A DNA stretch of 64,000 nt from Octopus sinensis (Eukaryota): positions 6,014,001 through 6,078,000 of the forward strand of contig NC_043023.1 of assembly GCF_006345805.1 (NCBI RefSeq). The letters run 5' to 3'. Under the pieces are notes generated by a model. That model ran no database searches and had not been told where the DNA came from. It was given only the letters and a program-made list of their open reading frames with translations. Position numbers and translations under genes: made by a program. Positions 4,735-4,863 of this stretch are shown one piece after another. Numbering within the stretch: position 1 is the stretch's first letter; the number at the start of each line of letters is the position of its first letter.

Positions 4735-4863
4735 CCAACCTTGTCTTTGCAAATGTACAAGAAGAAGACTCCTACAAAGACACTGCCTATGTTTGCGCTG
4801 CAACCAATTTGTTTTTACGAAGAATCAATATGCTTAATACCATTTATTTGAGAACCTTACCAG
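4735..4863 (+). CDS. Cassette A exon: Ig2 C-half (NLVFANVQEEDSYKDTAYVCAATNLFLRRINMLNTIYLRTLP)
   Basis: ttttccag acceptor, gtgagt donor, 129 nt, phase 1-1, conserved YxC; not in ORF track. Confidence 0.9.

What the first reader, a model, noticed from the sequence alone, without database searches (positions are those of the whole stretch)
4790..4863. Hypervariable Ig2 F-G loop/G strand, the known homophilic-binding edge of L1-family CAMs
Seen: the first half of this exon is nearly identical between cassettes (NLVFxNVQEEDSYKDTAY), but the second half switches from VCAATNLFLRRINMLNTIYLRT (A) to ARVAFNMFVRIFSVGKSIYLKT (B, about 37405-37477). B also gains Ig2 N-glycosylation sequons (NVT, NFT). Established: Ig2 G-strand/FG-loop contacts mediate trans-homophilic dimers in neurofascin and related horseshoe CAMs. 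Inference: each cassette encodes its own binding specificity.
Basis: partly seen in the sequence, partly recalled or inferred. Interest (0 to 1): 0.7.

Follow-up and report, generated by a model that had tools for sequence, protein, structure and literature searches.

The report
Variable binding edge in octopus Ig repeats
Two neighbouring copies of an octopus gene module resembling the head of the nerve-cell adhesion protein neurofascin differ most at the strand neurofascin uses to pair with itself, which hints at, but does not prove, copy-specific binding.

Summary
Positions 4735-4863 and 37349-37477 are intact, same-length, same-phase exons. They encode the second half of Ig domain 2 in two tandem repeat units (A, B) of an octopus neuroglian-like, Ig-only array. 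The first 56 nt match at 53/56; the last 73 nt match at 51/73 (14 of 22 residues differ).

This is the most divergent stretch of the 1,076-nt A/B coding alignment (permutation P = 2.5e-4). It is also the most variable window across six octopus units.

The segment is the end of the F strand, the FG turn and the G strand. It aligns without gaps to neurofascin FTHT216I217Q, the centre of the Ig2 homodimer sheet. The second hotspot, the Ig2 CD region, aligns to the other half of that interface.

- Synonymous divergence is also raised in the patch, so mosaic history or gene conversion contributes.
- B has lost the invariant F-strand cysteine.
- Two O. vulgaris units share almost the same patch.
- The NVT sequon was lost in A, not gained in B.
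- Annotated transcripts join units in series rather than choosing one cassette.
- No FN3, transmembrane or signal-peptide exon was found.

No binding has been tested.

The parts
4735..4863 (+). Unit A exon for the second half of Ig2 (strands E-F-G), 129 nt, phase 1 at both ends
   Evidence: AG at 4733-4734, GT at 4864-4865, open frame; tblastn to octopus neuroglian-like proteins
4791..4863 (+). The finding: variable patch of unit A, VCAATNLFLRRINMLNTIYLRT(LP). It covers the end of the F strand, the FG turn (LFLR) and the G strand
   Evidence: 51/73 nt and 8/22 residues shared with B; strand assignment from the model of paralog P0002; ungapped alignment to neurofascin [22 protein letters not shown]
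37349..37477 (+). Unit B exon for the second half of Ig2
   Evidence: Same length, phase and splice sites as A
37405..37477 (+). Variable patch of unit B, ARVAFNMFVRIFSVGKSIYLKT(LP). The F-strand Cys is replaced by Arg (CGT at 37408-37410)
   Evidence: Three-way DNA alignment with O. bimaculoides L001, which has TGT; Cys is present in the other 21 homologs aligned
2829..3199 (+). Unit A exon for the second half of Ig1 and first half of Ig2. It contains the second hotspot (3112-3168, EAKFTWLLKYSDGRLKVLD, Ig2 C strand and CD region)
   Evidence: the hotspot aligns to the NF155 Phe168/Met170/Met174 region
32351..32721 (+). Unit B exon for Ig1 second half and Ig2 first half; hotspot 32634-32690 (EPNVTWVLKRDHWSTKALN)
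6798..6900 (+). Unit A Ig3 first-half exon
8319..8512 (+). Unit A Ig3 second-half exon, 97.9% identical in DNA to the B copy (recent gene conversion likely)
12264..12398 (+). Unit A Ig4 first-half exon
14380..14523 (+). Unit A Ig4 second-half exon
19512..19794 (+). First copy of the single-exon sixth Ig domain ('Ig6'), 283 nt instead of 285, frameshifted
23738..24022 (+). Second copy of the Ig6 exon, intact, phase 1-1
26769..27053 (+). Third copy of the Ig6 exon, intact, phase 1-1
31228..31333 (+). Unit B Ig1 first-half exon. It starts in phase 1, in frame with the Ig6 donor. The unit A counterpart lies upstream of the window
42147..42249 (+). Unit B Ig3 first-half exon
43878..44071 (+). Unit B Ig3 second-half exon
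46787..46921 (+). Unit B Ig4 first-half exon
50788..50931 (+). Unit B Ig4 second-half exon
57076..57257 (+). Unit B Ig5 first-half exon; no counterpart found in unit A
61566..61656 (+). Unit B Ig5 second-half exon

Best explanation
The window carries two consecutive repeat units (A and B) of an octopus-lineage array. Each unit encodes the Ig1-Ig6 part of an L1/neurofascin/contactin-type ectodomain, with a predicted Ig1-4 horseshoe, and nothing but Ig domains.

The units evolve by tandem duplication and frequent gene conversion, which keeps most exons alike. Two short stretches on the outer edge of Ig2 stay different between units: the C strand/CD region, and the FG turn plus G strand, which is this finding. 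These are the stretches neurofascin and contactin-2 use to pair two molecules through an intermolecular beta-sheet.

The most likely reading is that this edge is a binding surface and that selection favours or preserves different versions of it, so units or unit types differ in what they bind: themselves, each other, or another ligand.

Shown here: the exon anatomy, the clustering of differences, the mapping onto the neurofascin interface, the mosaic history, and the excess of amino-acid changes in the closest pair.

Inferred: that the octopus proteins bind through this edge, and that the differences change specificity.
For: 1. Exon pairs A/B have equal lengths, phases and splice sites, with no stop codon and no indel in 1,076 nt. 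Random substitution at the observed level would give 4.8 stops on average, P(no stop) = 0.008. The reading frames have therefore been maintained.
2. Differences are clustered. The patch has 20 differences in 54 nt (P = 2.5e-4). The second hotspot, the Ig2 CD region, has 19 in 54 nt.
3. The same two windows rank first and second in variability among six octopus units. Ig2b second half is the least identical segment in all six nucleotide pairs.
4. The best solved relatives are neurofascin 155/186. The model of paralog P0002 has mean pLDDT 84, above 90 across Ig1-4, and matches 3p3y at TM 0.91.
5. The patch aligns without gaps to the neurofascin G strand. Of the five NF155 interface residues tested by mutation (Phe168, Met170, Met174, Thr216, Ile217; PMC9633819), four fall on positions that differ between A and B, against a background of 23.5% (my count; binomial P about 0.012).
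6. In the closest pair (B versus O. bimaculoides L001, introns about 90% identical), the two Ig2 patches carry 18 amino-acid-changing differences to 1 silent. Elsewhere the ratio is 37 to 20 (Fisher P about 0.01).
7. History is mosaic. Ig3b is 97.9% identical between A and B; Ig1b and Ig4a of A are closest to the O. sinensis unit; Ig4b of B is closest to the O. sinensis unit.
Against: - Silent divergence is also raised in the patch (dS 0.41 against 0.115 elsewhere, Fisher P = 0.02). For the deeper pairs dN/dS in the patch is below 1. Much of the A/B contrast may therefore reflect an older or imported tract rather than selection on amino acids.
- Outside the patches dN/dS is still 0.5-0.9, so constraint is weak overall.
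- B lacks the F-strand cysteine and A has an extra one, so at least B's Ig2 may be compromised.
- P0003 and P0004, different units of one genome, have nearly the same patch.
- Counts are small. There are only six sequences from four assemblies, and some may be orthologs rather than paralogs.
- The CD-region alignment to neurofascin contains a 4-residue gap.
- Nothing shows that these proteins dimerise, are secreted or reach the membrane.
Confidence: 0.45

Rival explanations
1. Relaxed constraint in redundant repeat units. The Ig2 edge strand is exposed and little constrained, so it drifts fastest. The units, B at least, are decaying, and the pattern carries no specificity.
For: - Overall A/B dN/dS is about 1.0 and 0.5-0.9 outside the patches.
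- B lost the invariant Cys.
- Unit A lacks Ig5.
- One Ig6 copy is frameshifted.
- Among distant homologs the stretch after the F strand is poorly conserved apart from one Gly (consensus).
Against: - No stop and no indel occurs in either unit over 1,076 nt, where about 4.8 stops are expected (P = 0.008).
- The FG/G segments of Ig1, Ig3 and Ig4 are almost invariant between A and B, so this is not a general property of such segments.
- In B versus L001 the patch is more diverged than the flanking intron (85% against about 90%), with 10 amino-acid-changing differences to 1 silent.
Confidence: 0.28
2. A gene-conversion mosaic with no selection on the patch. Most of the unit has been homogenised between neighbours, and the patch is a short tract left over from, or copied in from, a more distant unit of the array.
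For: - Silent divergence in the patch is about four times that of the rest.
- There are three discrete patch types rather than a continuum.
- Which units are closest changes from segment to segment, and Ig3b is 97.9% identical between A and B.
Against: - It does not explain why the two tracts that escape homogenisation are the two halves of one known binding surface.
- It does not explain the 18:1 replacement excess between B and L001.
- It describes how the pattern arose and is compatible with selection keeping it.
Confidence: 0.3
3. Immune-type recognition rather than self-adhesion. The units are Ig-only horseshoe proteins like insect hemolin, and the variable edge binds microbial or other foreign ligands under host-pathogen selection.
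For: - Only Ig families are found in the gene models and the window.
- Hemolin and hemolin-like proteins are among the hits (1bih; P0019).
- Short Ig-only 'neuroglian-like' proteins exist in another mollusc (P0012).
Against: No signal peptide, expression data or ligand is known. Hemolin has four Ig domains and is a single-copy-type gene, whereas here units of five or six Ig domains are strung together.
Confidence: 0.12
4. One reading: A and B are alternative cassettes of one gene, only one of which is used per transcript (as in Dscam1 or clustered protocadherins), each giving its own homophilic specificity.
For: - All unit-boundary exons are phase 1-1, so any Ig6 donor could splice in frame to any downstream Ig1 acceptor.
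- The variable patch lies on the dimer edge.
Against: - Annotated O. vulgaris and O. sinensis models run Ig4 of one unit, then Ig6 (once or twice), then Ig1 of the next unit, so units are included in series.
- The duplicated block is a whole multi-exon unit, not one exon.
- No signal-peptide exon precedes Ig1 of unit B, and no constant FN3 or transmembrane exons are seen.
Confidence: 0.07

Closest known systems
Neurofascin (NF155/NF186) Ig1-6, L1 family; PDB 7ok5, 3p3y
   Same: It is the best sequence match (E = 1e-52) and the best fold match. It has six Ig domains with an Ig1-4 horseshoe and the same spacing from the F-strand Cys to the end of the G strand in Ig2. The variable octopus patch and CD region align to the residues that form the neurofascin homodimer and the contactin-1 complex.
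   Different: About 25-30% identity only. No FN3 repeats, transmembrane helix or ankyrin-binding tail was found. The module is repeated in tandem and apparently read in series. Unit A lacks Ig5, and B lacks the Ig2 disulfide.
Contactin-2 / TAG-1 / axonin-1 Ig1-4
   Same: It has a horseshoe, an Ig2 G-strand to G-strand homodimer, and an FG loop of Ig2 needed for cell aggregation (PMC3406286). It is among the top hits.
   Different: Contactins are single GPI-anchored proteins with FN3 repeats. No array of diversified copies is known.
Hemolin (insect, PDB 1bih)
   Same: It is an Ig-only relative of neuroglian with a horseshoe.
   Different: It has four Ig domains, is a secreted single polypeptide, and has no tandem units.
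Dscam1 hypervariable exons (arthropods)
   Same: It is a horseshoe IgSF protein in which short variable segments of Ig2 (also Ig3 and Ig7) pair symmetrically with the same segment of the partner and set homophilic specificity (PMC3406286).
   Different: In Dscam1 single half-domain exons are duplicated and used in a mutually exclusive way. The variable part is the first half of Ig2, and binding is face-to-face. Here whole units are duplicated and the variable part is the G-strand edge.
Clustered protocadherins (gene conversion with preserved specificity regions)
   Same: They form a tandem array in which conversion homogenises most of the sequence while the recognition region stays diverse. 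That parallel rests on my own knowledge and was not tested here.
   Different: A different fold (cadherin), one large variable exon per isoform with its own promoter, and shared constant exons.

Membership tests
L1 family CAM (L1CAM, neurofascin, NrCAM, CHL1, neuroglian) | Six N-terminal Ig domains, the first four forming a horseshoe | tested here: met
   Unit B has exons for Ig1-Ig5 in the window, and the Ig6 exon type is present after unit A. The model of paralog P0002 matches NF155 Ig1-6 best and 3p3y at TM 0.91, rmsd 2.5 A. Caveats: the model is of a paralog, and unit A lacks Ig5.
L1 family CAM (L1CAM, neurofascin, NrCAM, CHL1, neuroglian) | Three to five fibronectin type III domains after Ig6 | tested here: not met
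   No fn3 match in P0002, P0003 or unit A. None in + strand ORFs of at least 30 aa from the non-repeat parts of about 15000-21000, 27580-31250 and 51000-64000; ORFs of about 21000-27580 were read by eye only and showed only Ig6 copies. The 3' end of the array lies outside the window.
L1 family CAM (L1CAM, neurofascin, NrCAM, CHL1, neuroglian) | Single transmembrane helix and cytoplasmic ankyrin-binding (FIGQY) tail | tested here: not met
   No such Pfam match in the gene models or window ORFs. O. vulgaris models end right after Ig6. P0002 ends in a short hydrophobic tail of unknown nature with low model confidence.
L1 family CAM (L1CAM, neurofascin, NrCAM, CHL1, neuroglian) | Homophilic trans binding through the Ig2 edge | not testable with these tools
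   Only the sequence mapping was possible.
Hemolin | Secreted protein of exactly four Ig domains with a signal peptide | tested here: not met
   Units have five or six Ig domains and are joined to one another in the gene models. No signal-peptide exon was seen upstream of Ig1 of unit B.
Dscam1-type mutually exclusive exon cluster | Tandem alternative versions of one exon, one chosen per transcript | tested here: not met
   The duplicated block runs from Ig1 to Ig6, with collinear blocks 2298-18005 and 32081-59626. Gene models include consecutive units. Selector or docking RNA elements were not examined.
Clustered-protocadherin-type variable/constant gene | Each variable unit has its own start codon and signal peptide and splices to shared constant exons | tested here: inconclusive
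   No start or signal exon was found before unit B, and no constant exons lie in the window. Both could lie outside the window.

The most novel reading that the evidence does not exclude
Octopuses carry a tandem array of neurofascin-like horseshoe modules whose Ig2 dimer edge comes in several self-matching versions. Choice or combination of units gives cells a recognition code. This would be a third, independent route to the kind of diversity that Dscam1 gives arthropods and clustered protocadherins give vertebrates.
Probability: 0.08. Interest if true: 0.9.

Novelty: new variant of a known kind. Interest (0 to 1): 0.5.

Why it matters
If the variable edge does set binding preference, the array would show how a well-understood adhesion interface, the Ig2 G-strand sheet of neurofascin and contactin, can be diversified by duplication plus selective escape from gene conversion. 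This would be in an animal known for large expansions of other recognition genes. It would also give a compact test system: swapping 22 residues plus the CD loop between units. If the difference is only drift in redundant repeats, the locus remains a clear example of mosaic evolution in a tandem Ig array, and of gene models that need long-read correction.

Tried and rejected
- A whole-window tblastx self-comparison timed out because of the many short interspersed repeats. I used restricted regions instead.
I pasted ORF concatenates instead.
I modelled the O. sinensis paralog P0002 instead. A:A, B:B and A:B dimer prediction was therefore not possible.
- The primary neurofascin structure paper (PMC3013039) is not held. 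I used the 2012 review and the 2022 NF155 paper. The review's 'Ile213' does not fit its own Thr222/Gln224 numbering; I relied on the NF155 numbering, which I checked against the chain index.
- Forced global alignment of 120-nt intron flanks gave 68% identity, but it includes non-homologous insertions. I did not use it as a neutral yardstick.
- Loci for O. vulgaris P0003 and P0004 are not on record.
- Literature searches for this array (neuroglian or hemicentin with octopus; IgSF expansion) found no description of it. The octopus mucus and ink proteome papers give no sequence that would link their 'neuroglian' entries to this array, and the ink peptide is a transmembrane-like stretch as in a canonical neuroglian.
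- RNA editing as an explanation for B's Arg codon was rejected, because A-to-I editing cannot turn CGT into a Cys codon.

Full report
**What is at the coordinates.**
Positions 4735-4863 form an exon with AG before it and GTGAGT after it. It reads (T)NLVFANVQEEDSYKDTAYVCAATNLFLRRINMLNTIYLRTLP. Its counterpart at 37349-37477 reads (G)NLVFVNVQEEDSYKDTAYARVAFNMFVRIFSVGKSIYLKTLP. Fourteen of 22 residues differ.

**The surroundings.**
The window is eukaryotic and full of short interspersed repeats of about 420 bp. A self-comparison shows two collinear blocks on the + strand, about 2298-18005 and 32081-59626. Each block holds the same series of Ig half-domain exons, and I fixed their borders by reading the splice sites.
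- Unit A has Ig1b/2a, Ig2b, Ig3a, Ig3b, Ig4a and Ig4b. Three copies of a single-exon Ig domain ('Ig6') follow, at 19512-19794 (frameshifted), 23738-24022 and 26769-27053.
- Unit B has Ig1a (31228-31333), the same six exons, and Ig5a and Ig5b.
- All six shared exon pairs have equal lengths, phases and GT-AG sites, with no stop codons.
- No Ig5 was found in unit A.

**What family it is.**
The only close database relatives come from octopuses:
- 'neuroglian, partial' from O. bimaculoides (P0001);
- 'neuroglian-like' from O. sinensis (P0002, 581 aa);
- 'hemicentin-1-like' models from O. vulgaris (P0003, P0004 and P0023-P0026).

Among solved structures the best matches are neurofascin Ig1-6 and Ig1-4 (E = 1e-52 and 2e-45), then contactins and hemolin. 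An AlphaFold model of P0002 has mean pLDDT 84, above 90 through Ig1-4. It matches NF155 Ig1-6 best, and the neurofascin Ig1-4 dimer entry 3p3y at TM 0.91 and rmsd 2.5 A.

Pfam finds only Ig families in the gene models and in the remaining window ORFs. There is no FN3 and no L1-type cytoplasmic tail. This is therefore an L1/contactin-like head, not a demonstrated L1-family adhesion molecule.

**How the units are strung together.**
The annotated octopus models run across unit borders:
- P0023 goes from an A-like Ig4 end (AFLSFH) straight into Ig6 and then into Ig1 of the next unit.
- P0024 has two Ig6 copies in series before the next Ig1.
- P0002 starts inside an Ig6 exon, 30 nt downstream of where the upstream model ends in that same exon.

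None of these models has a signal peptide. In the window, the Ig4b, Ig6 and Ig1a borders are all phase 1, so serial reading stays in frame. This favours units read in series, or fragmentary models of a very long gene, over a one-of-several cassette choice. Only long-read RNA can settle it.

**Is the divergence more than chance?**
- Over the 1,076-nt A/B coding alignment there are 133 differences. The densest 54-nt window has 20, and it is exactly this patch (permutation P = 2.5e-4). At the protein level the result is 14/22 (P = 0.004).
- The runner-up (19 differences in 54 nt) is the C strand/CD region of the same Ig2 domain: EAKFTWLLKYSDGRLKVLD against EPNVTWVLKRDHWSTKALN.
- The corresponding FG/G segments of Ig1, Ig3 and Ig4 are nearly identical between A and B.
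- Among six octopus units the FG/G window ranks first and the CD window second in variability.
- In every nucleotide pair among A, B, L001 and L002, the second half of the Ig2b exon is the least identical segment (0.60-0.85), while its first half is among the most identical.
- Three patch types appear: LFLRRINMLNT (A), MF.R.F.VGK (B and O. bimaculoides) and KF.RETTRGKP (O. sinensis and O. vulgaris).

**Where the patch lies on the fold.**
In the P0002 model the F strand is 194-202, the turn is 203-206 and the G strand is 207-218. In unit A this gives TAYVCAATN, then LFLR, then RINMLNTIYLRT. From the F-strand Cys to the end of the G strand, the octopus and neurofascin sequences have the same length, so the alignment has no gaps.

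NF155 Thr216, Ile217 and Gln218 fall on A Arg-Ile-Asn and on B Ile-Phe-Ser.

According to PMC9633819, the NF155 homodimer and the contactin-1 complex are built around a super beta-sheet of the two Ig2 G strands. Thr216Ala disrupts dimerisation. Phe168, Met170, Met174 and Ile217, changed together to Asp, abolish clustering. PMC3406286 describes the same G-G pairing for TAG-1 and neurofascin, and the need for the Ig2 FG loop in axonin-1 aggregation.

Phe168, Met170 and Met174 align to the octopus CD hotspot, although that alignment has a 4-residue gap. Four of these five tested positions differ between A and B.

**Selection or history?**
- For A against B, the patch has raised silent as well as replacement divergence (dS 0.41 and dN 0.45, against 0.115 and 0.10 elsewhere). 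This points to an older or imported tract.
- Which units are closest changes from segment to segment, and Ig3b is 97.9% identical between A and B. This shows gene conversion in the array.
- In the closest pair, B against the O. bimaculoides contig (introns about 90% identical), the two Ig2 patches carry 18 replacement differences to 1 silent. The rest carries 37 to 20 (Fisher P about 0.01). This is the best hint of positive selection.
- Outside the patches dN/dS is 0.5-0.9, so constraint is weak. Even so, the frames are clearly kept: random substitution would give 4.8 stops on average, P(no stop) = 0.008, and there is no indel in any exon.

- B's F-strand cysteine is Arg (CGT where the O. bimaculoides copy has TGT). 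That Cys is present in the other 21 homologs aligned. A has an extra Cys just before the B-strand Cys.
- The NVT/NVS sequon is in five of six units and missing only in A, so B did not gain it. NFT is shared by B and O. bimaculoides.
- P0003 and P0004, distinct units of O. vulgaris, differ by a single residue in the patch, so not every unit has its own version.
- No binding has been tested.

**Verdict.**
It falls on the strand that the closest solved relatives use for dimerisation. The functional inference is reasonable but unproven. It competes with drift in weakly constrained repeats and with a plain gene-conversion mosaic. No description of this octopus array turned up in the searchable literature.

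Noticed in passing
window 37408-37410 and 3069-3071: Unit B's Ig2 has Arg (CGT) in place of the invariant F-strand Cys, leaving the B-strand Cys unpaired. Unit A's Ig2 has an extra Cys (GSCLVLPC) besides the normal pair. Both units thus carry an odd number of cysteines in Ig2.
   Followed up: partly
window 19512-19794, 23738-24022, 26769-27053: Three tandem copies of a single-exon Ig domain sit 4.2 and 3.0 kb apart. The first is 2 nt short and frameshifted. O. vulgaris models include two such copies in series, while the O. sinensis locus L002 has one at this junction, itself read in two frames.
   Followed up: partly
window 29020-29064, minus strand: An inverted fragment of an Ig1 first-half exon (VLPCKASGEPQPT) lies between the units. 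Its flank, about 28494-29068, matches the 5' part of O. bimaculoides contig L001 at 83-93%.
   Followed up: no
window 8246-8672 vs 43806-44235: The Ig3 second-half exon and its flanks are 93% identical (the exon 97.9%) between units, far above the 80-87% of other exons. This looks like a recent gene-conversion tract.
   Followed up: partly
window 15216-16467 and 55426-57053: Very long (ATT)n/(TAT)n microsatellites of 1.25 and 1.6 kb sit at the same place, after Ig4, in both units. In B the array ends about 20 nt before the Ig5a exon; in A no Ig5 follows.
   Followed up: partly
window 10646-10886 vs 45446-45689: An intronic block is 90% identical between units with no open frame in any reading frame. 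It may be a conserved non-coding element or a shared old insertion.
   Followed up: no
window 34070-34649, + strand: An ORF in the Ig2 intron of unit B (…ETVDHLISGCRVLAPAEYKARHDRV…) looked transposon-derived to me by eye and was not searched against any library. It lies in a stretch of the B intron with no counterpart in A.
   Followed up: no
window, more than 20 places (e.g. 24-454, 6265-6683, 7208-7614, 51578-51990, 62989-63400): A short interspersed repeat of about 420 bp occurs in both orientations at 85-92% identity and accounts for most self-matches in the window. A 358-bp tandem repeat lies at 21352-22591.
   Followed up: no
L002 9777-10054 and 10001-42651: In O. sinensis the upstream model ends at 9971 and P0002 starts at 10001, 30 nt apart inside one Ig6 exon that is read in two frames. 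The two models are probably one gene split by a frameshift or an assembly error. P0002 ends in a hydrophobic tail (ATPAAITTIVAIVMYY…) of unknown meaning.
   Followed up: partly
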